From positions 1 through 64,000 of IMG/VR virus record IMGVR_UViG_3300035181_000471: a DNA stretch of 64,000 bases. One strand, 5' to 3'. Positions within the stretch are counted from its first letter, which is position 1, and the number at the start of each line of letters is the position of its first letter. Below the pieces are notes generated by a model that made no database searches, was not told where the DNA came from, and worked only from the letters and a program-made list of their open reading frames with translations. Positions 11,214 to 56,964 of this stretch are shown here, piece after piece. The translations under genes were made by a program, and so were the position numbers.

Positions 11214-12452
11214 TTATAGGTCATCGTCATCGAAGTCGGTAATGCGAATGGCATCCCCACTCTCAAGGCTCTCAGAGTCGCCAGCGAGGAACTTCTCAGC
11301 CGGACTGATCTCAGCGGTGTAAGCGCCATGATCTTCGTTGACGGCATCAATCACTAGCAGACGAAGGCGACCTAGAATCTCATAATCTGGCTCAGTTACG
11401 AGGTTACGAATAGCCTCATCCTTGGAGTCAAACACGATAATAGGCTTCTCTTCATCACCGACGATATAACGCTTGCCCTTGTTAGTGATAAGGCCATACT
11501 TACGAGCTAGTTCACGAACAGAGATCCAGTCGTCAATTCCGAGACCGGGACGAAGCCAGAGGTGGAATTCACGATAACCACCAGTGGTGATCTTGTTCTT
11601 CAGAATACGAACCTTGACCTTCGTGGCAACATAGTCGCCCTTGTTATCCCCAGGCTCAAGAATGAAGGGATCATCAGCATATCCTCCAGCGCGGAAAGCC
11701 TTGGCAACATTGACTTCGATCATCTCAGAAGGGACGAAGCGAACACTGTTACCACCTGGGAGGGTGTAGTTAAGATTGGTGATAGAGGGGTACTTGGAAG
11801 CCATCATAGCTTCGTTGGTCATCTCGATTCTAGCACGAATCTGGTTAACCATCAGGAACAAGCAGTCGTACTTGATGGCGTAAGGAAGCGTGAGGTCAAA
11901 GAACTTCTGCATACCTCTGGCGTGTTCACCAACGGAAGCCTTGAAAGCAGCACCATTGAGAATTTCCTTTTCATCAACCATAGACTTCATGCGAGGGATG
12001 GAGTCGAATACGAACAGCTTGACGCCAGCCTTCATCAGAGTAATGGTCTGCTTGATTGCCTCTTCCACGGAGGAAGGACGGAAGACCACGAGAGAGCCAC
12101 GACTAGTGTCTACACCAATCTTACGGAGGTAGTCACCAGTTGCCGTGCCTTCAAAGTCGAAGATAGCCACAGGCTCGTCCTCAACTCTCTGATAGGACTT
12201 CACAGACGAATAGCAGATGGTGGATTTACCACCGTGTTCCTTGCCGTGAATGTGAATTACACGACCACCGCGAGGCATACCACGAAGACGGAGAACATCG
12301 TCAAGGACGATGGACCCGAATGGGGTAAACTTCTCTTCCGCATCACACTGTAACATTGTGGATTCGTCTAATACGCTGAGAGCTTCAAGGAAAGCGGCCT
12401 TCCTGTCTGAAGTGTTGAATTCGACATTCTTCATTGTTCTAGTTTTTGCCAT
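11214..12452 (-). CDS. recA: RecA/UvsX recombinase
   Basis: G...LD, GKEHGGKST Walker A, FVFDS, VNQIR, PGG, KNK motifs. Confidence 0.93.
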   Translation of the reverse strand: MAKTRTMKNVEFNTSDRKAAFLEALSVLDESTMLQCDAEEKFTPFGSIVLDDVLRLRGMPRGGRVIHIHGKEHGGKSTICYSSVKSYQRVEDEPVAIFDFEGTATGDYLRKIGVDTSRGSLVVFRPSSVEEAIKQTITLMKAGVKLFVFDSIPRMKSMVDEKEILNGAAFKASVGEHARGMQKFFDLTLPYAIKYDCLFLMVNQIRARIEMTNEAMMASKYPSITNLNYTLPGGNSVRFVPSEMIEVNVAKAFRAGGYADDPFILEPGDNKGDYVATKVKVRILKNKITTGGYREFHLWLRPGLGIDDWISVRELARKYGLITNKGKRYIVGDEEKPIIVFDSKDEAIRNLVTEPDYEILGRLRLLVIDAVNEDHGAYTAEISPAEKFLAGDSESLESGDAIRITDFDDDDL

Positions 12453-12461
12453 GAGTGGCTC

Positions 12462-13259
12462 CTATATGTTAACTTCAAGTTTTTCAAGACGCTTCTTAGG
12501 GGGAATCCTGGCGTCCTTAATACTAATACTGTAGGTTTTGGTCTCGTACTTGAACCAGTAGTTAGGATTGTAAAGAATCCCCTTTTTGATGATCTTCTGG
12601 TTGCGTCCTTTACCCTTTACAACATCAGAGAAGTCACACAAAGCAAGCATAACTTTCTCCGGCATGGTCTTGATATCTTGGCCTAAGAATAGATCACTAG
12701 CATGACGGCCAAACTGACCCAATAAGACTGCATCGCAGGCGTCTGAATCAATCCCTGGATACTCAATTGCATTGGCGTATTCGTGCGCCTTACGGATGTT
12801 CTCGTGTTTATTATTACCCTTCTCCACTAGGCCAAGGCAAGAGCGCAGGGTCATAGCATTGATATGCATGACACACACTTCCTTGAAGGCGTGAGTGACT
12901 GAAGGTAGGACTTTGGATTGGATGATTTTGTTTACAATGTTGAGCCAGTCGTTGCCTGGAGTTGGAGCTTCAAGTGAAATAATCAGGCCCTTCTCAGAGT
13001 CAGCGTGAGCCAGGATAGAGGTGGTGATAAAATCAGCCATCATCACAGAACGAACCCACACGGGATAACTAGAATCGGCTGGCTTCAAGGATTTAATTAG
13101 TTCCCACTTAGGGCCATCAACGGTGTTTGTCATGACCGCTAGTCCTGTTCTGCTTAGCGAGGGGTCAATGCCGACAATCACCCATTCATTCATGTCTCTT
13201 GGAGTAGGGATTTTTACTTTGTCATCGAAGGTTAGTTTTGGTTTTGCTACTCTTGCCAT
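12462..13259 (-). CDS. RuvC-like Holliday junction resolvase
   Basis: IVGIDPSLSRTG, ISLE, DACDA acidic residues. Confidence 0.8.
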   Translation of the reverse strand: MARVAKPKLTFDDKVKIPTPRDMNEWVIVGIDPSLSRTGLAVMTNTVDGPKWELIKSLKPADSSYPVWVRSVMMADFITTSILAHADSEKGLIISLEAPTPGNDWLNIVNKIIQSKVLPSVTHAFKEVCVMHINAMTLRSCLGLVEKGNNKHENIRKAHEYANAIEYPGIDSDACDAVLLGQFGRHASDLFLGQDIKTMPEKVMLALCDFSDVVKGKGRNQKIIKKGILYNPNYWFKYETKTYSISIKDARIPPKKRLEKLEVNI

Positions 13260-51101: not shown

Positions 51102-52207
51102 AACTGGCCTACTCCGTGTAGGGTAGAGATCTGACGGTTCACCTTGACAAAGGTGGCGCACTTTGGTAGATCCTTCAGGGATAGAGCGCCGGAGTAGGTG
51201 CAGGCTGATCTGAGACCACCGAGAAGATCCTGAATGGTGGGTTCTACTGGCCCCTTATAGGGGACTCGTAGCACTCGGCCCTCACTGGCTCGATAGTTCT
51301 TTAGTGAACTACCGTGGGCCTCTTGAGCCTTCTTTGAACTCATGCCATAGAACTCTACGAACTGTTGCATATCAATTCTTTCATGATACTTCGGAGTGTC
51401 TAGGCCAGTTAATGAGCCAGTAACGGTGGTATTTCCGATGACATTGCTCTTAACTAATTCGTGAGTCACCTTCCCGCCACCTTCGGTGTGACCCGCAAAC
51501 ATAGTTCCGATCATAACAAAGTCAGCGCCAGCGGCGAATGCTTTAGCGGCATCCCCCGGAGAAGTAATTCCACCATCACCCACAATCCAACCACCGATTC
51601 CGTGAGCGGCGTCAGCGCATTCAATGATAGCCGATAGCTGAGGGTAGCCGACTCCGGTCTTGATGCGAGTTGAACAGGCATTCCCAGGTCCAATGCCCAC
51701 CTTAACAATGTCTGCACCGTCTAGGAGAAGTTGATTGGTCATGTCTGGAGTAGCTACATTTCCCGCCATTAAAATAATGTGGGGATACTTGTCTCTGAAT
51801 CTCTTAATGAAGTCCGAGAATTTGCTAGTGTAGCCGTTAGCTACATCTACACAGACAAAGTTAGCACGAACCTGATCATACTTTTCTACATCCTCAGCGG
51901 TCATCCCCATGCTGTAGATTGCGTAGTCTGAGGACGGAGTTTTATAGAATAGCTTCAGTTCATTTACATCATAGTGCTTGGTTAGGCAGGTAGAAATACA
52001 CTGGTTGCCTAGAGCTTCGGCCATTTCAAATGTTCCTACTCCGTCCATGTTGGCGGCAACAATAGGAATCCCACAGAAGCTCAAATCACTATGTTTGAAT
52101 TGGAAGGTGCGTTGGAGGACTACCTCAGATCTGGATTCTAGCTCGGATCTTTTTGGAACAAGTAAGACATCAGCAAAATCTAGCTTTACATCTTCAATAA
52201 TTCTCAT
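51098..52207 (-). CDS. guaC: GMP reductase
   Basis: DVLL.PKRS.L.SRS, AANMDGVG, DVANGY, KVGIGPG..C.TR, YGMSS, YRASEG. Confidence 0.95.
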   Translation of the reverse strand: MRIIEDVKLDFADVLLVPKRSELESRSEVVLQRTFQFKHSDLSFCGIPIVAANMDGVGTFEMAEALGNQCISTCLTKHYDVNELKLFYKTPSSDYAIYSMGMTAEDVEKYDQVRANFVCVDVANGYTSKFSDFIKRFRDKYPHIILMAGNVATPDMTNQLLLDGADIVKVGIGPGNACSTRIKTGVGYPQLSAIIECADAAHGIGGWIVGDGGITSPGDAAKAFAAGADFVMIGTMFAGHTEGGGKVTHELVKSNVIGNTTVTGSLTGLDTPKYHERIDMQQFVEFYGMSSKKAQEAHGSSLKNYRASEGRVLRVPYKGPVEPTIQDLLGGLRSACTYSGALSLKDLPKCATFVKVNRQISTLHGVGQL

Positions 52208-52698
52208 GAAAATTTCCCTTGATTACAGAGAGCAACAAGCTCGTTGATGGTGGTCATAGCGGATTTATGAAGTATACCATGGCCCCCTTTAGCCTTCCAT
52301 TGAGCAATGTTCTTTTCATTGTCATCAATGAGGATATCACCGGGGGTGCAATGCTTCTGTTTGTCAATAGCGTATGGTCCAATATTGAACTCTACCCACT
52401 CACCAAGATTAACCCTTACCCACTCAGCCTTATCTGCTTCTGCGGTAGGGATTGACACTCTACGAGGAATTCCTGTAAGGATTCGTGGCTCATAGCCATG
52501 AACAACGAGATAGCCCCATAATTCTCCGGCATCAGGCATGGGCTTAAGCTGACGGTAGAACCCGGCACCGTTGCTGTTCTTTATCAAAAGATCCCACATT
52601 TCCTGATCTGATACCTCATTTGGATAGCGTCCTGTTAGGTGTTTAAAGCCATTGTCATAATCTGCTACCACACCATCTAGGTCTACGAATGTTTTCAT
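52204..52698 (-). CDS. HAD 5'(3')-deoxyribonucleotidase
   Basis: DLDGV.AD, K..W, ILIDD...N...W. Confidence 0.88.
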   Translation of the reverse strand: MKTFVDLDGVVADYDNGFKHLTGRYPNEVSDQEMWDLLIKNSNGAGFYRQLKPMPDAGELWGYLVVHGYEPRILTGIPRRVSIPTAEADKAEWVRVNLGEWVEFNIGPYAIDKQKHCTPGDILIDDNEKNIAQWKAKGGHGILHKSAMTTINELVALCNQGKFS

Positions 52699-52792
52699 TT
52701 CACTCTCCAGTTACTATTACTTGTTTTCAGTTACTTTCATTGAAGTAAAAAAATAGATGGACTACGAACATGAATTGTAAGGGAGATTTTCA

Positions 52793-53536
52793 ATGAGAAA
52801 ATATACTTGGAAACCAGACATACCAGATTTTAGAGATCGTGCCTACAGCACAGTAGCTCCGACTGTTCTGCCGCCTTCGATAGACCTGAGGGCGTCATTT
52901 CCACCTTGTTATGATCAGGGTCAGCTAGGTTCATGCACAAGCAATGCTATCGCAGGAGATTGTGAATTTAATATGATTTTGCAGAAAGAGGACTCGTTTA
53001 CCCCTGCAAGACTGGGAATTTACTACTTAGAAAGAAGGCTAGAGGGGACTGTAAATCAGGATTCCGGGGCTCAGATCCGTGATGGAATTAAAGTTGTGGC
53101 TAAATATGGAGTATGGCCAGAAACGATGCAGCCCTACAATATTACCAAATTCAAAAAGGCACCCACAAATGCTATGTTGAAAATTGGGGCCACTCACCAA
53201 GCCCTCACTTACGAAAGATTAGATGGGAGTCTTCTTCAGATGAAGACTCGTTTGGCCTCGGGATTTCCTTTTGTCTTCGGGTTCACTGTATATGAGTCTT
53301 TTGAGTCTGCCACGGTTGCTAAGACAGGCATCGTCCCAATGCCCAAACCCACTGAAAGTGTTCTAGGAGGCCACGCTGTTTTGGCTGTTGGATATGATGA
53401 TTCCAAAAATGCGGTCCTGGTTAGAAATTCCTGGGGTTCTGGGTGGGGACTAAACGGCTATTTCTGGCTACCATATGATTACATCACTAATCCCAATTTA
53501 GCAGATGATATGTGGGCCATTTCCAGGATGAAGTAA
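52793..53536 (+). CDS. papain-like C1A cysteine protease (xylellain-like)
   Basis: DQG.LGSC, GGHAV..VGY, RNSWG..WG..GY. Confidence 0.93.
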   Translation: MRKYTWKPDIPDFRDRAYSTVAPTVLPPSIDLRASFPPCYDQGQLGSCTSNAIAGDCEFNMILQKEDSFTPARLGIYYLERRLEGTVNQDSGAQIRDGIKVVAKYGVWPETMQPYNITKFKKAPTNAMLKIGATHQALTYERLDGSLLQMKTRLASGFPFVFGFTVYESFESATVAKTGIVPMPKPTESVLGGHAVLAVGYDDSKNAVLVRNSWGSGWGLNGYFWLPYDYITNPNLADDMWAISRMK

Positions 53537-53835: not shown

Positions 53836-53856
53836 GTGAGGGGACTGCCCCCTCAC
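53836..53856 (-). terminator. GC-rich hairpin after the Pth-like gene
   Basis: GTGAGGGG/CCCCTCAC. Confidence 0.5.
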
Positions 53857-53862
53857 TAGGGA

Positions 53863-54474
53863 TTACAGAAGTTCGAAGTTTCTGTGGTACCAGAAACCGT
53901 CTTGGAAAGTGTTCATAATGGCAACAGCGGTAATCTTGTTGTCCATGTCTGGCTCTCTCCAAATTGTTTTGTATTCGCCAGGACCAGTCTTCCCAGAGAG
54001 ATCTTTGCTACTGGCGTAAGGACTAGTGTCCTTTTTAGGAGTCATTAGGATGAGAGTCCCATTGGTCCAAGGAGCGAGTGGATGCTCCTTTTGAAACTGT
54101 GCGGCGGCGTGACTAGCCTGGACAACCTTTTGTGAGGTCGAGAGACTTGGATCGACAACGATGTAAAGCTTTTTGGCTCCAGGGTTGTTGAGGTAGGTCT
54201 TGAAGTGTTGAATCCCGGCCTGCATTGGGGCTAGAAGGGCCTTGTATTCTCTTTGCTTGCCTTCGGTATAGGGTAGGGTCTCACAAGGGCCTTTAGCCTT
54301 GTGTCCCGCTAATCCGCGAATCAGAGCGCGATGCTCACTGAGAGCGATATGGAGCATTCTGATTTCGGTTCTAAGGCCACCTTGCTTCTTGTGCTTTTCG
54401 ATAAGCAGTCTGAGCAAGAGTCTAGCGTTGAAGTAAGCTTCTTTTTGTTCCTGAGTGTAAGTGACATAAGCCAT
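53863..54474 (-). CDS. Pth2-like peptidyl-tRNA hydrolase with N-terminal extension
   Basis: KLYIVV...LS..Q...Q.SHA and WREPD....TAVA; start trimmed to MAYV. Confidence 0.72.
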   Translation of the reverse strand: MAYVTYTQEQKEAYFNARLLLRLLIEKHKKQGGLRTEIRMLHIALSEHRALIRGLAGHKAKGPCETLPYTEGKQREYKALLAPMQAGIQHFKTYLNNPGAKKLYIVVDPSLSTSQKVVQASHAAAQFQKEHPLAPWTNGTLILMTPKKDTSPYASSKDLSGKTGPGEYKTIWREPDMDNKITAVAIMNTFQDGFWYHRNFELL

Positions 54475-54551
54475 GTTTTTCTCCTTTAGAATGGTTGGCT
54501 GGTTTGTTAGCGGCAACTTCTAAGGATGGCTTATGGTGAGCGTGATGGCAC

Positions 54552-54575
54552 CTAGAGGTGATTTCTCCCGGTCAT
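54552..54575 (-). promoter_or_regulatory. uORF MTGRNHL-amber upstream of the Pth-like gene
   Basis: AAGGAG-N6-ATG, TAG stop; next in-frame stop TAA at 54531. Confidence 0.5.
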
Positions 54576-54602
54576 ATTATACTCCTTTATGGTTAAGTAA
54601 AA

Positions 54603-54680
54603 TGGTGCCCTCGGAGGAATTCGAATCCCCGATCAAGGTTTTAGAGACCCCAGCTTTAGGCCAGACTAAGCTACGAGGGC
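54603..54680 (-). tRNA. amber suppressor tRNA (anticodon CTA)
   Basis: Perfect acceptor GCCCTCG/CGAGGGC, A73, loop CT CTA AA, TTCGAAT, CCA. Confidence 0.88.
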
Positions 54681-54687
54681 TAGTAAC

Positions 54688-55050
54688 CTAGACTTCTGGG
54701 ATGATTAGAGGCTCAATCTGGCTTAGATCATTGGGAGTCAACTTGACATCACCAAAGGCGGCAAGAGGGAGTGGTTCGAAGGGGACTTCAATCTCAGTGG
54801 TTAGAAGCTCGGTCATTGCGGCGGTAAAACCAGGACCATCTTCAGGTGAAAAGACGAACTGGGTCTTGTCATCATTCAACACACCGTTGAACTTCTCAAT
54901 GAGCTTCTGTCTTTCCGTGTCGAAAGTAGCCATCTCAGCGATCAGCACCTTGGCTAAACGAGAGATCTGGTATGATGTCTTAGTAGGGAACACCTTGTCG
55001 TAAATGGTTGAACCTAGAATGGACTGAATTTCTTGAATCTTTAGCTTCAT
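54688..55050 (-). CDS. hypothetical phage protein (DUF1617-like)
   Basis: P.K.SY.ISRL.K....E...F..ER.KLI.K pattern. Confidence 0.6.
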   Translation of the reverse strand: MKLKIQEIQSILGSTIYDKVFPTKTSYQISRLAKVLIAEMATFDTERQKLIEKFNGVLNDDKTQFVFSPEDGPGFTAAMTELLTTEIEVPFEPLPLAAFGDVKLTPNDLSQIEPLIIPEV

Positions 55051-56142: not shown

Positions 56143-56964
56143 TTACTGGTGTATCTTGTGTCGCCTATCATTAAAGGAGAACTCAATATACTCTACTTTC
56201 TGGTTACCAGTGAATTTAGTCTTGAATTGTTCAATATATTTATTAGCTTTGCCCTTTTTGACATATGCTATTGTAGTATGAGGCGCATAGTCAGGGAATG
56301 AATTGGCGTTATCTGGGTAGACTTCATTGCAATAATCGAATAAATCCTGGAGTTCTGGACTCTTTTCAACCTTTATAATGAGAACATCGTATGGTGCATC
56401 AGCGGGAGTGAACTGGCTTAAACCTAACCACTCAACCGACTTGACTTCTAGGCTTGGGTTGAACTTGTCTGGTGTTTGGTCCTTAATTCCGTAGAGACAA
56501 GTAATGTGGGGGTAGTCCTCTTTTCCCTTGATCTCTCCATCGGTGTAGACATCCTCTGGATCAACACTTTCAACGAACTCTAGAATTTTCTTAGTGACCT
56601 CTGGAGCGTAAGTCAACTGCACTGTGCTGTAGTCGTAAGCGGCTTGCTTTGTAAGGAGTCTGGCGAAAAAGGTTAGGAACCCCTTTTTACCACCTTGGCC
56701 GTAAGCTCTATCGTGATCGCCTTGAACACTAAGAATGAACAAAACTCCTTCATCAACCTTACACACGGCTCTTATTCCTTGGGATACTCGGATGGAAAGG
56801 AAGCCTGGGTTAGACTTAATTGGTTCTAAGTGGGTTCCTGCCCCATCTCTTAGCTGTTGTTCAGTGGCCTCAGTGACTTTAATCCTCAGAGCATCAAGAA
56901 GACGCTTTATATTCGGATTCTTTTTTGCCTGTTTAGTAGCGTCTTTTCCAAGTTCCATTTGCAT
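56143..56964 (-). CDS. RelE/HigB-like domain fused to a 2H phosphoesterase (Acb1/T4 57B-like)
   Basis: N: HLEP....GFLSIRV..GIRAV.......H..Y; C: PHITCLYG and FPDY.PHTTIAY. Confidence 0.8.
   Translation of the reverse strand: MQMELGKDATKQAKKNPNIKRLLDALRIKVTEATEQQLRDGAGTHLEPIKSNPGFLSIRVSQGIRAVCKVDEGVLFILSVQGDHDRAYGQGGKKGFLTFFARLLTKQAAYDYSTVQLTYAPEVTKKILEFVESVDPEDVYTDGEIKGKEDYPHITCLYGIKDQTPDKFNPSLEVKSVEWLGLSQFTPADAPYDVLIIKVEKSPELQDLFDYCNEVYPDNANSFPDYAPHTTIAYVKKGKANKYIEQFKTKFTGNQKVEYIEFSFNDRRHKIHQ

What the first reader, a model, noticed from the sequence alone, without database searches (positions are those of the whole stretch)
53863..54680. Candidate amber-readthrough switch: suppressor tRNA, amber uORF, RBS-hiding hairpin, peptidyl-tRNA hydrolase
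Seen, in transcript order: tRNA(CUA); 27 nt later the ATG of AAGGAG-N6-ATG ACC GGG AGA AAT CAC CTC TAG; seven codons on, an in-frame TAA (54531-33); 4 nt later a hairpin TCCTTAGAA-GTTG..GCT/AGC-CAAC..TTCTAAAGGA whose 3' arm contains the Shine-Dalgarno of the Pth2-like gene. Known: ribosomes melt about 10 nt ahead of the A site, and Pth recycles dropped-off peptidyl-tRNA. Inference: termination at UAG leaves the Pth RBS closed, whereas readthrough (suppressor active or RF1 limiting) brings the ribosome onto the hairpin and turns Pth on. I know of no described system of this form.
Basis: partly seen in the sequence, partly recalled or inferred. Interest (0 to 1): 0.85.

Follow-up and report, generated by a model that had tools for sequence, protein, structure and literature searches.

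The report
Amber-suppression-gated leader for phage Pth2-like gene
A jumbo phage places a tiny upstream reading frame with an in-frame UAG stop codon in front of a peptidyl-tRNA-hydrolase-like gene, so that the gene's ribosome-binding site is probably freed only when the phage's own amber-suppressor tRNA reads through that stop; the design is conserved in dozens of other phages and I found no description of it.

Summary
On the minus strand lie tRNA(CUA) (54680-54603), an SD plus 7-codon uORF ending in TAG (54554-52), six more in-frame codons ending Ser-Pro-TAA (54533-31), and a hairpin (54535-54465) that pairs the TAA region with the SD and AUG of a 203-aa gene whose C-terminal domain has a Pth2 fold. 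About 29 distinct relatives (protein identity down to ~35%) keep the design: SD-ATG, 1-8 codons, TAG, 4-6 codons always ending X-Pro-stop, then an anti-SD hairpin 51-68 nt before the gene. Arg is written CGN or AGA and Pro CCA/CCC/CCT, so the part after the TAG looks translated. The anti-SD arm lies inside the footprint of a ribosome at the second stop and outside that of one at TAG, and the arms covary. More distant relatives carry the stop codon inside the gene, 1-8 codons after the ATG; it is TGA in two loci, one next to a tRNA(UCA) and one next to an atypical tRNA whose loop contains UCA. 63 of 79 loci carry a suppressor tRNA. Best reading: a translational attenuator that makes the protein only when suppression is active, helped by slow termination at Pro-stop. 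Nothing here is experimental. The product's role is inferred.

The parts
54603..54680 (-). Amber-suppressor tRNA, anticodon CUA, class I, discriminator A73, encoded CCA
   Evidence: ARAGORN; Rfam tRNA 55.4 bits. It is not a recent copy of any other window tRNA: identity is at most 69%.
54582..54587 (-). Shine-Dalgarno AAGGAG of the leader ORF, 6 nt before its ATG
   Evidence: Sequence. An SD-like motif precedes the uORF ATG in all related leaders.
54531..54575 (-). Leader ORF MTGRNHL-[UAG]-VPSRSP-UAA: ATG 54575-73, in-frame TAG 54554-52, second stop TAA 54533-31
   Evidence: The same peptide is encoded in L002 with 4 synonymous codon changes after the TAG. The pattern is unique in the window.
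54552..54554 (-). The sensed amber codon, followed by G
   Evidence: A TAG is present in every related leader and is followed by a purine in all but one. CAC CTC TAG GT is invariant in six leaders.
54534..54542 (-). Arg-Ser-Pro codons just before the second stop (conserved R/K-x-P-stop motif; putative slow-termination signal)
   Evidence: The last codon is CCN in all ~29 distinct leaders, against 1 of 61 window genes ending in Pro. Arg is encoded by CGC/CGT/CGA or AGA.
54465..54535 (-). Hairpin that sequesters the SD and AUG of the Pth2-like gene; its 5' arm overlaps and follows the TAA
   Evidence: MFE and centroid fold, z=-3.46 for the leader and -5.2 for the hairpin. Cost of opening SD..AUG: 13.7 kcal/mol free, 13.7 with a ribosome at TAG, 4.1 with a ribosome at TAA. 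Arm covariation across the family.
54481..54486 (-). Shine-Dalgarno AAGGAG of the Pth2-like gene, inside the 3' arm of the hairpin
53863..54474 (-). 203-aa protein: N-terminal three-helix domain (about residues 1-96) plus a C-terminal Pth2-fold domain (about 97-203)
   Evidence: AF2 model, pLDDT 82. Foldseek PDB top hits 2zv3 and 1rlk (Pth2) and 2gax, prob 0.99/0.99/0.84. BFVD top hits include phage proteins annotated 'peptidyl-tRNA hydrolase', among them Myrna, RaK2, VH7D and Atu_ph07. Atlas structural TM 0.70-0.78 to PTH2 clusters. No Pfam hit above threshold.

Best explanation
This is a translational attenuator whose input is nonsense suppression.

The mRNA of the Pth2-like gene folds so that its SD and AUG are paired with the stretch at and just after the second stop codon of a short leader ORF. 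Ribosomes start on the leader's own strong SD.

- If release factor 1 terminates them at the in-frame UAG, their leading edge stays at least ~18 nt short of the anti-SD arm. The hairpin stays closed and the gene stays off.
- If the phage's tRNA(CUA) decodes the UAG, the ribosome translates 4-6 more codons and reaches the second stop. Its footprint (about -2..+13 nt around that stop) then covers the anti-SD arm. The conserved X-Pro-stop ending is expected to slow peptide release, so the ribosome dwells there, the downstream SD/AUG is exposed, and a second ribosome initiates.

The protein, a divergent Pth2-fold (aminoacyl/peptidyl)-tRNA hydrolase-like protein with a helical N-domain, is therefore made only when, and in proportion as, suppression is active.

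Shown: the anatomy, its conservation, amino-acid-level selection on the leader, the geometry, arm covariation, linkage to suppressor tRNAs, and the alternative 'stop inside the ORF' design in relatives.

Inferred: readthrough by this tRNA, the Pro-stop pause, the on/off outcome, and the enzyme's activity and role. My guess for the role is coping with, or limiting, the consequences of suppression, for example recycling peptidyl-tRNA from ribosomes that read through normal UAG stops.
For: 1. Conservation. Every locus of two protein subfamilies (39-84% and ~35-45% identity) has SD-ATG, 1-8 codons, TAG, 4-6 codons, X-Pro-stop, then 51-68 nt to the gene. The same pattern occurs once in 128 kb of window strands, and only twice elsewhere in 679 kb of loci.

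2. The post-TAG part looks translated. Window vs L002: the same VPSRSP peptide with 4 synonymous codon changes and none non-synonymous. Arg is CGC/CGT/CGA or AGA, and the final Pro is CCA/CCC/CCT. Before the TAG, MTGRxHL also varies synonymously.

3. Hairpin. Leader fold z=-3.46. Across 15 leaders, mean z is -3.1. The mean cost of opening SD..AUG is 9.9 kcal/mol free, 9.8 with a ribosome at TAG and 5.0 with a ribosome at stop 2. In 23 of 24 leaders, at least 5 SD/AUG nucleotides pair with the stop-2 footprint. The anti-SD arm spans about -2..+13 from stop 2 and starts at least +18 from the TAG in ~21 of 25. Cognate arm duplexes average -13.5 kcal/mol against -8.2 for non-cognate, permutation p<=5e-5.

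4. A second design with the same logic. Distant single-domain relatives have the stop inside the ORF 1-8 codons after the ATG, in several loci preceded by an SD. It is TAG where the neighbouring tRNA is CUA (L025, L030, L068-72, L076, Ralstonia phage RsoM2USA). It is TGA in L065, next to a tRNA(UCA), and in L077, next to an atypical tRNA whose 8-nt loop contains UCA and whose anticodon ARAGORN could not name.

5. Linkage. 63 of 79 loci carry a suppressor tRNA in the flank. This includes cultured mycobacteriophage Alice, where gp150 'peptidyl-tRNA hydrolase' is followed by an annotated tRNA-suppressor(cta).

6. TAG is an ordinary stop in the window: 10 of 61 genes, with no interrupted genes seen. 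The leader's TAG therefore is not simply a recoded sense codon.

7. Pro-stop is rare otherwise: 1 of 61 window genes. That C-terminal Pro slows release and triggers tmRNA tagging is from my own knowledge (Hayes, Bose and Sauer 2002), not checked here.
Against: - There are no transcript, ribosome or protein data. No RNA run was listed.
- It is unknown whether the tRNA is charged, and with what.
- In a few leaders (L010, L011, L039, L041) the predicted pairing or the energy difference is weak or in another register.
- In the shortest leaders the TAG-to-stop-2 distance is only 15 nt, so a ribosome at the TAG may touch the arm.
- The shuffle control that kept the stop-2 region fixed was significant for few individual leaders (3 of 24 at 0.05). 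The family-level tests carry the argument.
- The sequences are related, so the permutation p-value overstates independence.
- The putative catalytic Lys of the Pth2 motif is replaced by E or Q in 3 of 22 homologs, and the Pfam PTH2 threshold is not reached.
- For the 'stop inside the ORF' relatives I could not rule out that those genomes are recoded as a whole.
Confidence: 0.72

Rival explanations
1. The leader is a Pro-stop arrest peptide that senses something else, such as termination or peptidyl-tRNA hydrolysis capacity, EF-P or prolyl-tRNA. The UAG is read efficiently whenever the phage is active, so it acts as a timer or licence (phage present, tRNA made) rather than as a graded switch.
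For: The X-Pro-stop ending is invariant and the whole peptide is conserved. The product has a peptidyl-tRNA-hydrolase fold, which would allow feedback on a stalled peptidyl-tRNA(Pro).
Against: The TAG is just as invariant as the Pro-stop. Relatives that lack both leader and Pro-stop still carry the stop codon in the ORF, so dependence on suppression is the common denominator. This rival is compatible with the main model and differs only in which step is rate-limiting.
Confidence: 0.15
2. The leader ORF really ends at the UAG. The downstream conserved stretch is RNA structure only. Coupling works by termination at UAG followed by re-initiation or scanning, or the hairpin serves mRNA stability or processing after the tRNA is cut out.
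For: The leader directly follows a tRNA or tRNA-like element in both subfamilies, so processing must create an mRNA 5' end nearby. The hairpin is stable.
Against: The frame from TAG to stop 2 is always open and always ends CCN-stop. Arg alternates between CGN and AGA, and the changes between the window and L002 are all synonymous. RNA-only constraint does not predict this. The 51-68 nt to the AUG is long for re-initiation. The anti-SD arm is placed relative to stop 2, not to the TAG.
Confidence: 0.06
3. AGTATAAT is a -10 box and transcription starts downstream of the uORF ATG, so the uORF is never translated.
For: TATAAT lies between the SD and the ATG in the window and in L002.
Against: It is absent from all other leaders (TAACATC, GACTCG, GAGCT and others), whereas SD plus ATG plus TAG are kept. 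The consensus promoter scan found no site there.
Confidence: 0.02
4. The element next to the tRNA is a self-cleaving ribozyme (theta/HDV-like) or another known RNA, not a coding leader.
For: Theta ribozymes are reported next to phage tRNAs, a fifth of which are suppressors (PMC10879173).
Against: Rfam finds only the tRNA in 54380-54720 at E<=10. The codon-level conservation argues for translation. Rfam may not hold theta ribozymes, so this is not a complete test.
Confidence: 0.02

Closest known systems
Leader-peptide translational attenuation (ermC/ermB, cat/cmlA type)
   Same: A short leader ORF with its own SD. A hairpin sequesters the SD of the downstream gene. A ribosome held at a defined leader position melts the 5' arm and frees the SD.
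   Different: There the ribosome is held by an antibiotic plus the nascent peptide. Here the ribosome's position is set by whether a stop codon is read through by a suppressor tRNA, and the hold is a Pro-stop ending. (The erm and cat mechanisms are from my own knowledge.)
prfB (RF2) autoregulatory in-frame UGA
   Same: An early in-frame stop codon serves as a sensor of the balance between termination and an alternative decoding event, and this sets the output of a translation-factor gene.
   Different: RF2 uses a +1 frameshift within one ORF and senses its own product. Here the event is readthrough by a dedicated tRNA, the signal passes through an RNA hairpin to a separate ORF, and feedback by the product is not shown. 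(From my own knowledge.)
PepNL arrest peptide of E. coli (PMC11890864)
   Same: A short leader whose behaviour depends on stop-codon readthrough: Trp-tRNA reading UGA moves ribosomes to a downstream stop. It also has termination-stage arrest.
   Different: In PepNL, arrest occurs at the first stop and readthrough by a normal near-cognate tRNA relieves it. Here the first stop is the 'off' exit, a dedicated suppressor tRNA is the input, and the putative pause is at the second stop.
Phage 'code-change modules' and suppressor tRNAs of recoded phages (Borges et al., bioRxiv 10.1101/2021.08.26.457843)
   Same: A phage-encoded suppressor tRNA clustered with translation factors. The idea that suppression gates the expression of particular genes.
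   Different: Those modules hold aaRS and release factors and act on recoded late genes. No hydrolase is mentioned in that paper (0 occurrences). The present window uses TAG as a normal stop, and the gated target is a single regulatory leader.
Pth2 (PF01981) and phage 'peptidyl-tRNA hydrolase' genes in tRNA arrays
   Same: The fold, and the N-terminal motif (hydrophobic strand, D-L, then K-x-V-Q-x-x-H-A). A PTH2-like gene in the tRNA arrays of cluster C mycobacteriophages is already noted (PMC5966550).
   Different: Sequence scores are below Pfam's cut-off. There is an extra helical N-domain. In the texts I searched, no published link to suppressor tRNAs or to stop-codon gating turned up.

Membership tests
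Pth2 peptidyl-tRNA hydrolase (Pfam PF01981) | Sequence match above Pfam's gathering score | tested here: not met
   0 families for the window protein. PTH2 at E=0.18 in 2 of 22 homologs. Single-domain relatives score 13-20 bits against a cut-off of 23.
Pth2 peptidyl-tRNA hydrolase (Pfam PF01981) | Pth2 alpha/beta fold | tested here: met
   Foldseek PDB top hits 2zv3 and 1rlk, prob 0.99, TM by target 0.50-0.56. Atlas TM 0.70-0.78. BFVD hits to phage proteins annotated peptidyl-tRNA hydrolase, E 6e-5 to 7e-3.
Pth2 peptidyl-tRNA hydrolase (Pfam PF01981) | Catalytic residues (Lys of the G-K motif, Asp of the C-terminal motif; recalled from memory) | tested here: inconclusive
   K116 aligns with the Lys of a solved hydrolase's motif in a relative but is E or Q in 3 of 22 homologs. 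Q119, H122 and D176 are invariant.
Pth2 peptidyl-tRNA hydrolase (Pfam PF01981) | Hydrolysis of peptidyl-tRNA | not testable with these tools
   Needs an enzyme assay or complementation of a pth(ts) strain.
Leader-peptide translational attenuator | Short uORF with its own SD directly upstream of the regulated gene | tested here: met
Leader-peptide translational attenuator | Conserved hairpin that sequesters the downstream SD/AUG, with its 5' arm inside the footprint of a ribosome at a defined leader codon | tested here: met
Leader-peptide translational attenuator | Ribosome position in the leader changes downstream translation | not testable with these tools
   Needs reporter fusions and toeprinting.
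Termination-stage ribosome arrest peptides (TnaC, PepNL, Pro-stop) | Peptide sequence conserved at the amino-acid level, with Pro in the P site at a stop codon | tested here: met
   X-Pro-stop in all ~29 leaders. Synonymous codon variation. 1 of 61 window genes ends in Pro.
Termination-stage ribosome arrest peptides (TnaC, PepNL, Pro-stop) | Demonstrated stall at the stop codon | not testable with these tools
   Needs toeprinting, peptidyl-tRNA detection or ribosome profiling.
Nonsense-suppressor tRNA | Canonical cloverleaf with an anticodon complementary to a stop codon | tested here: met
   46 distinct suppressor tRNAs in related loci.
Nonsense-suppressor tRNA | Aminoacylated and active in decoding UAG | not testable with these tools
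   Indirect support only: coding conservation after the TAG, and the pairing of stop codon type with the neighbouring tRNA's anticodon.
Stop-codon-recoded phage genome (code 15) | In-frame TAG in many genes; TAG avoided as a terminator | tested here: not met
   10 of 61 window genes end in TAG. Coding is dense under the standard code and no split genes were seen.
tRNA-associated theta (HDV-like) ribozyme | Match to an HDV-like ribozyme model next to the tRNA | tested here: inconclusive
   No Rfam hit other than tRNA at E<=10. Rfam's coverage of theta ribozymes is unknown to me.

The most novel reading that the evidence does not exclude
The module is a closed-loop homeostat for nonsense suppression. 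The ribosome paused on peptidyl-tRNA(Pro) at the second stop is itself resolved, directly or indirectly, by the encoded Pth2-like protein. Alternatively, the protein deacylates or recycles the suppressor tRNA. Either way its synthesis would feed back on the readthrough that induced it, much as RF2 controls its own frameshift. Pth2-like proteins would then be a general, so far unrecognised component of phage genetic-code-switching machinery.
Probability: 0.2. Interest if true: 0.95.

Novelty: new variant of a known kind. Interest (0 to 1): 0.87.

Why it matters
**A target for orphan suppressor tRNAs.** Suppressor tRNAs are repeatedly reported in standard-code jumbo phages with no identifiable target, for example XacN1 (PMC5852040) and RsoM2USA (PMC8504454). 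This module supplies a concrete, conserved target and a testable logic. The phage measures its own suppression activity and couples a tRNA-hydrolase-like protein to it.

**A natural suppression sensor.** As far as I could find, it would be the first natural cis-regulatory element whose input is nonsense suppression by a dedicated tRNA.

**A candidate new player in code switching.** It points to Pth2-like proteins as companions of suppressor tRNAs in many phage lineages, including the TAG-recoded Lak megaphages and more than 200 cultured mycobacteriophages.

**A compact tool.** The element is about 110 nt and could serve as a sensor of amber-suppression efficiency in genetic-code-expansion work.

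**Better annotation.** It explains why some of these genes go unannotated. The RsoM2USA homolog lies in an unannotated gap because of its in-frame TAG.

Tried and rejected
- **Nucleotide search** of the phage collection with the locus found only tRNA-sized hits.
- **Sequence searches of the protein.** A single-protein search of viral contigs found only the source contig. Searching PDB by sequence, with the protein or with the family profile, gave nothing meaningful.
- **Consensus structure.** RNAalifold on MAFFT alignments of the leaders predicted no consensus structure, because the arms are misaligned. I replaced it with per-sequence folding, footprint-constrained partition functions and a cognate versus non-cognate arm permutation test.
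- **Pair-type table.** The table from duplexfold is descriptive only, since the pairs are complementary by construction.
- **Ochre version.** I looked for a leader with TAA next to the tRNA(UUA) loci (L028, Lak phages) and found none.
- **Bacterial and archaeal genomes.** The scan of reference genomes found no relative.
- **Expression data.** No RNA-seq run holds the locus.
- **tRNA origin.** The suppressor tRNA is not a recent duplicate of another window tRNA. Its amino-acid identity stays unknown.
- **Readthrough of window genes ending in TAG** gave one in-frame fusion candidate, which may be chance.
- **Recoding of the distant relatives.** Tests of whether neighbours of the 'stop inside the ORF' relatives are recoded were inconclusive.
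Full report
**Source and setting**

The window is part of IMG/VR contig UViG_3300035181_000471, 221 kb. It appears to be a jumbo phage from sediment or microbial-mat metagenomes. GC is 46%. Genes lie almost entirely on the minus strand, and 36 tRNA genes are found between 53.6 and 64 kb. TAG ends 10 of 61 confidently sized ORFs and coding is dense under the standard code. This is therefore not a TAG-recoded genome, at least in this window.

**The observation**

- tRNA(CUA) at 54680-54603: ARAGORN and Rfam tRNA 55.4 bits.
- 27 nt later, AAGGAG-N6-ATG (ATG at 54575).
- Seven sense codons, then TAG (54554-52).
- Six further in-frame codons, then TAA (54533-31).
- A hairpin that hides the SD of the next gene.

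An outer stem pairs the TAA region (CAUAAGCCAU) with the main start (AUGGCUUAUG), so both SD and AUG are sequestered over 54535-54465. The 143-nt leader folds at -34 kcal/mol, z=-3.46, with 0 of 200 shuffles as stable. The hairpin segment alone has z=-5.2. The full composite pattern occurs once in both strands of the window.

**Conservation**

The 203-aa protein has 22 database homologs. Scans with their alignment returned 76 further loci. Every locus of the two-domain subfamily 1 has a tRNA(CUA) immediately upstream, followed by a leader of the same design:
- MTGRNHL*VPSRSP (window and L002)
- MTGRSHL*VLARSP, MTGRTHL*VVSRSP, MTGRTHL*VDNRGP, MTGKHL*VDSRSP
- MFMSFNHL*VVSRSP, MFKSLNGL*VLINSP
- MKKL*VSTRPP, MKTL*VSPRAP, MREIIW*VADSSP
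- MS*TRPP, MS*NRSP, MKY*QRPP, ML*IHSPP

A second subfamily has a different N-domain and proteins of 185-189 aa. It has the same kind of leader (MR*ILRPP, MT*VSKPP, MS*ITGPP, MN*VCKPP, ML*VSKPP, MRFS*VDKPP and others), but its tRNA(CUA) lies just downstream of the gene.

The invariants are:
- an SD before the uORF ATG;
- a TAG followed by a purine (one exception);
- 4-6 more codons, the last always Pro;
- a second stop (TAA, TGA, once TAG);
- 51-68 nt to the main ATG.

**The part after the TAG looks translated**

Between the window and L002 (68% protein identity, differing tRNA stems), the six codons after the TAG differ at four codons, all synonymous, including CGC to AGA. Across the family, the Arg at -3 is written CGC, CGT, CGA or AGA, and the last Pro is CCA, CCC or CCT. 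Before the TAG, Thr-Gly-Arg also varies synonymously, while CAC CTC TAG GT is invariant in six leaders. RNA-only constraint does not predict this pattern. Only 1 of 61 window genes ends in Pro.

**Hairpin and geometry**

In 23 of 24 leaders, the MFE pairs at least 5 nt of the SD/AUG region with nucleotides in the footprint of a ribosome whose A site holds the second stop. All 24 are more stable than the mean of their shuffled controls.

I computed partition functions with footprint positions forced single-stranded. The mean cost of opening SD..AUG is 9.9 kcal/mol in free RNA, 9.8 with a ribosome at the TAG and 5.0 with a ribosome at the second stop. For the window the values are 13.7, 13.7 and 4.1.

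The anti-SD arm spans about -2..+13 from the first base of the second stop and begins at least 18 nt after the TAG in ~21 of 25 leaders. The arms covary. Each leader's 5' arm pairs better with its own SD region than with those of other leaders: -13.5 vs -8.2 kcal/mol, permutation p<=5e-5. The sequences are related, so that p-value is generous.

MAFFT-based RNAalifold failed on these indel-rich leaders. No U tract follows the hairpin, so transcription attenuation is unlikely.

**An independent line: the stop inside the ORF**

More distant single-domain relatives (~95-125 aa) lack the leader. Many of them carry a stop codon in frame 1-8 codons after an ATG that in several loci has its own SD, with no alternative start before the conserved first strand:
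- ATG ACT TAG (L025/26/63)
- ATG AAA AAG CAY TAG (L068/70/71)
- ATG ACG TAG (L072)
- ATG TTG TAG (L076)
- eight codons then TAG (L030/69)

The cultured Ralstonia jumbo phage RsoM2USA has AAGGAG-N8-ATG TTG TAG. Its gene lies in an unannotated gap in GenBank.

In L065 the neighbouring tRNA has anticodon UCA and the in-frame stop is TGA. L077 also has TGA. Its neighbouring tRNA is atypical, with an 8-nt loop that contains UCA, and ARAGORN could not name its anticodon. Two architectures therefore impose the same dependence on the cognate suppressor.

Caveat: I could not exclude genome-wide recoding in those short contigs.

**Linkage**

- 63 of 79 loci hold a suppressor tRNA in the fetched flank, 46 distinct ones.
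- In mycobacteriophage Alice, gp150 'peptidyl-tRNA hydrolase' is followed 250 nt later by an annotated tRNA-suppressor(cta). Myrna is similar. tblastn finds relatives of this protein in 206 Mycobacterium phage records.
- Lak megaphages have a homolog ~600 nt from a tRNA(UUA).
- No relative was found in reference bacterial or archaeal genomes with the patterns used.
- The profile finds 794 clusters at E<=1e-3.

**The protein**

AF2 (pLDDT 82) gives three long helices followed by an alpha/beta domain.
- Foldseek's best PDB hits are archaeal Pth2 (2zv3, 1rlk) and Atu0240.
- Most of the best BFVD hits are phage proteins annotated peptidyl-tRNA hydrolase.
- The ESM Atlas places the C-domain among viral clusters in which about 30% of members carry PF01981, with TM 0.70-0.78.
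- PTH2 is the recurrent sub-threshold Pfam hit among single-domain relatives, and the N-terminal motif aligns with a solved hydrolase.

Pfam's cut-off is not met, and the motif Lys is not invariant. 'Pth2-like fold, activity unknown' is therefore the honest label.

**Mechanism**

RF1 termination at the UAG releases the ribosome before it reaches the anti-SD arm, and the gene stays off. Decoding of the UAG by the suppressor carries the ribosome to the second stop. There the Pro-stop ending should slow release (own knowledge: C-terminal Pro impairs termination), the arm is held single-stranded, and the SD/AUG 40-55 nt downstream becomes available.

Why the product should be tied to suppression is inference. 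Possibilities are:
- it recycles peptidyl-tRNA generated when ribosomes run through normal UAG stops (16% of this phage's genes);
- it limits or tunes the suppressor;
- it resolves the paused leader ribosome itself, which would be feedback.

**What is known**

- PTH2-like genes in phage tRNA arrays are on record (PMC5966550).
- Suppressor tRNAs without known targets are reported in jumbo phages (PMC5852040, PMC8504454).
- Code-change modules are described in recoded phages, without any hydrolase.
- Theta ribozymes occur next to phage tRNAs.
- PepNL is a leader modulated by UGA readthrough.

Seven full-text searches found no description of a stop-codon-gated Pth2-like gene or of a suppression-sensing leader.

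**Verdict**

This is a real, conserved, previously undescribed variant of leader-peptide translational attenuation whose input is nonsense suppression. Confidence in the gating logic is about 0.7. The role of the product remains open.

Noticed in passing
window 12462-13259 (-) and 11214-12452 (-): A 265-aa gene of unknown function ends in TAG+G. It is in frame, 9 nt apart with no stop, with the following RecA/UvsX-like gene. Amber readthrough would fuse the two. This could be chance (roughly 0.3).
   Followed up: partly
window 54688-54690 (-): The gene just upstream (55050-54688, PHROG 1401, unknown function) ends in TAG only 7 nt before the tRNA(CUA). Its readthrough frame stays open for 36 codons through the tRNA gene. 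This is not conserved in L002, where the stop is TAA.
   Followed up: partly
L046:1770-1890: The tRNA(CUA) gene lies inside the leader ORF, between ATG AAC AAG TTT ACG TAG and CGT CCT CCT TGA, and the frame is kept open across the tRNA. Processing of the tRNA would cut the leader in two. This is unexplained.
   Followed up: partly
L013, L014, L015, L019, L020, L022: about 2550-2640: In subfamily 2 the leader is preceded by TGGTATAAT and a tRNA-like element. The element has an acceptor stem, T arm and ACCA but an aberrant, variable anticodon arm. ARAGORN calls it Phe(aaa) or 'taaa', or finds nothing, and there is no Rfam hit. It may be a processing signal that creates the mRNA 5' end.
   Followed up: partly
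L083:1150-1540 (Ralstonia phage RsoM2USA MG752970, about 68.9-69.3 kb): An unannotated Pth2-like ORF beginning AAGGAG-N8-ATG TTG TAG ATT. It was probably missed by annotation because of the in-frame TAG. The phage has one tRNA(CUA) with no known target.
   Followed up: partly
L080:2470-2500 (phage Alice) and L081:1165-1200 (phage Myrna): The annotated GTG start of the cluster C mycobacteriophage 'peptidyl-tRNA hydrolase' is directly preceded, in frame, by ATG TAG (Alice) or GTG TAG (Myrna). The SD is spaced for the GTG, so the meaning is unclear.
   Followed up: no
L027, L031, L054, L064 (200 nt before the match): The equivalent of the subfamily-2 N-domain is encoded as a separate ORF in another frame, overlapping the start of the Pth2-like ORF. 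The two domains therefore occur both fused and split.
   Followed up: no
L078 and L079 (Prevotella Lak megaphages): Lak phages, known to be TAG-recoded, encode a homolog of the Pth2-like domain ~600 nt downstream of a tRNA with anticodon UUA.
   Followed up: partly
window 54552-54562 (-), and alignment A3: CAC CTC TAG GT is identical at the nucleotide level in six diverged 'MTGRxHL' leaders, although neighbouring codons vary synonymously. It is possibly a decoding context that favours suppression over RF1.
   Followed up: no
window 53836-53856 (-): A GC-rich hairpin (8-bp stem) lies right after the Pth2-like gene and before tRNA-Thr, with no U tract. It may be a processing or stability element.
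   Followed up: no
window 52204-53536 and 56143-56964: Neighbours include an NT5C-type 5'-nucleotidase (52204-52698, -), a papain-like C1 peptidase on the opposite strand (52793-53536, +), and a 273-aa protein with sub-threshold Acb1 / 2'-5' RNA ligase (2H phosphoesterase) matches (56143-56964, -).
   Followed up: no
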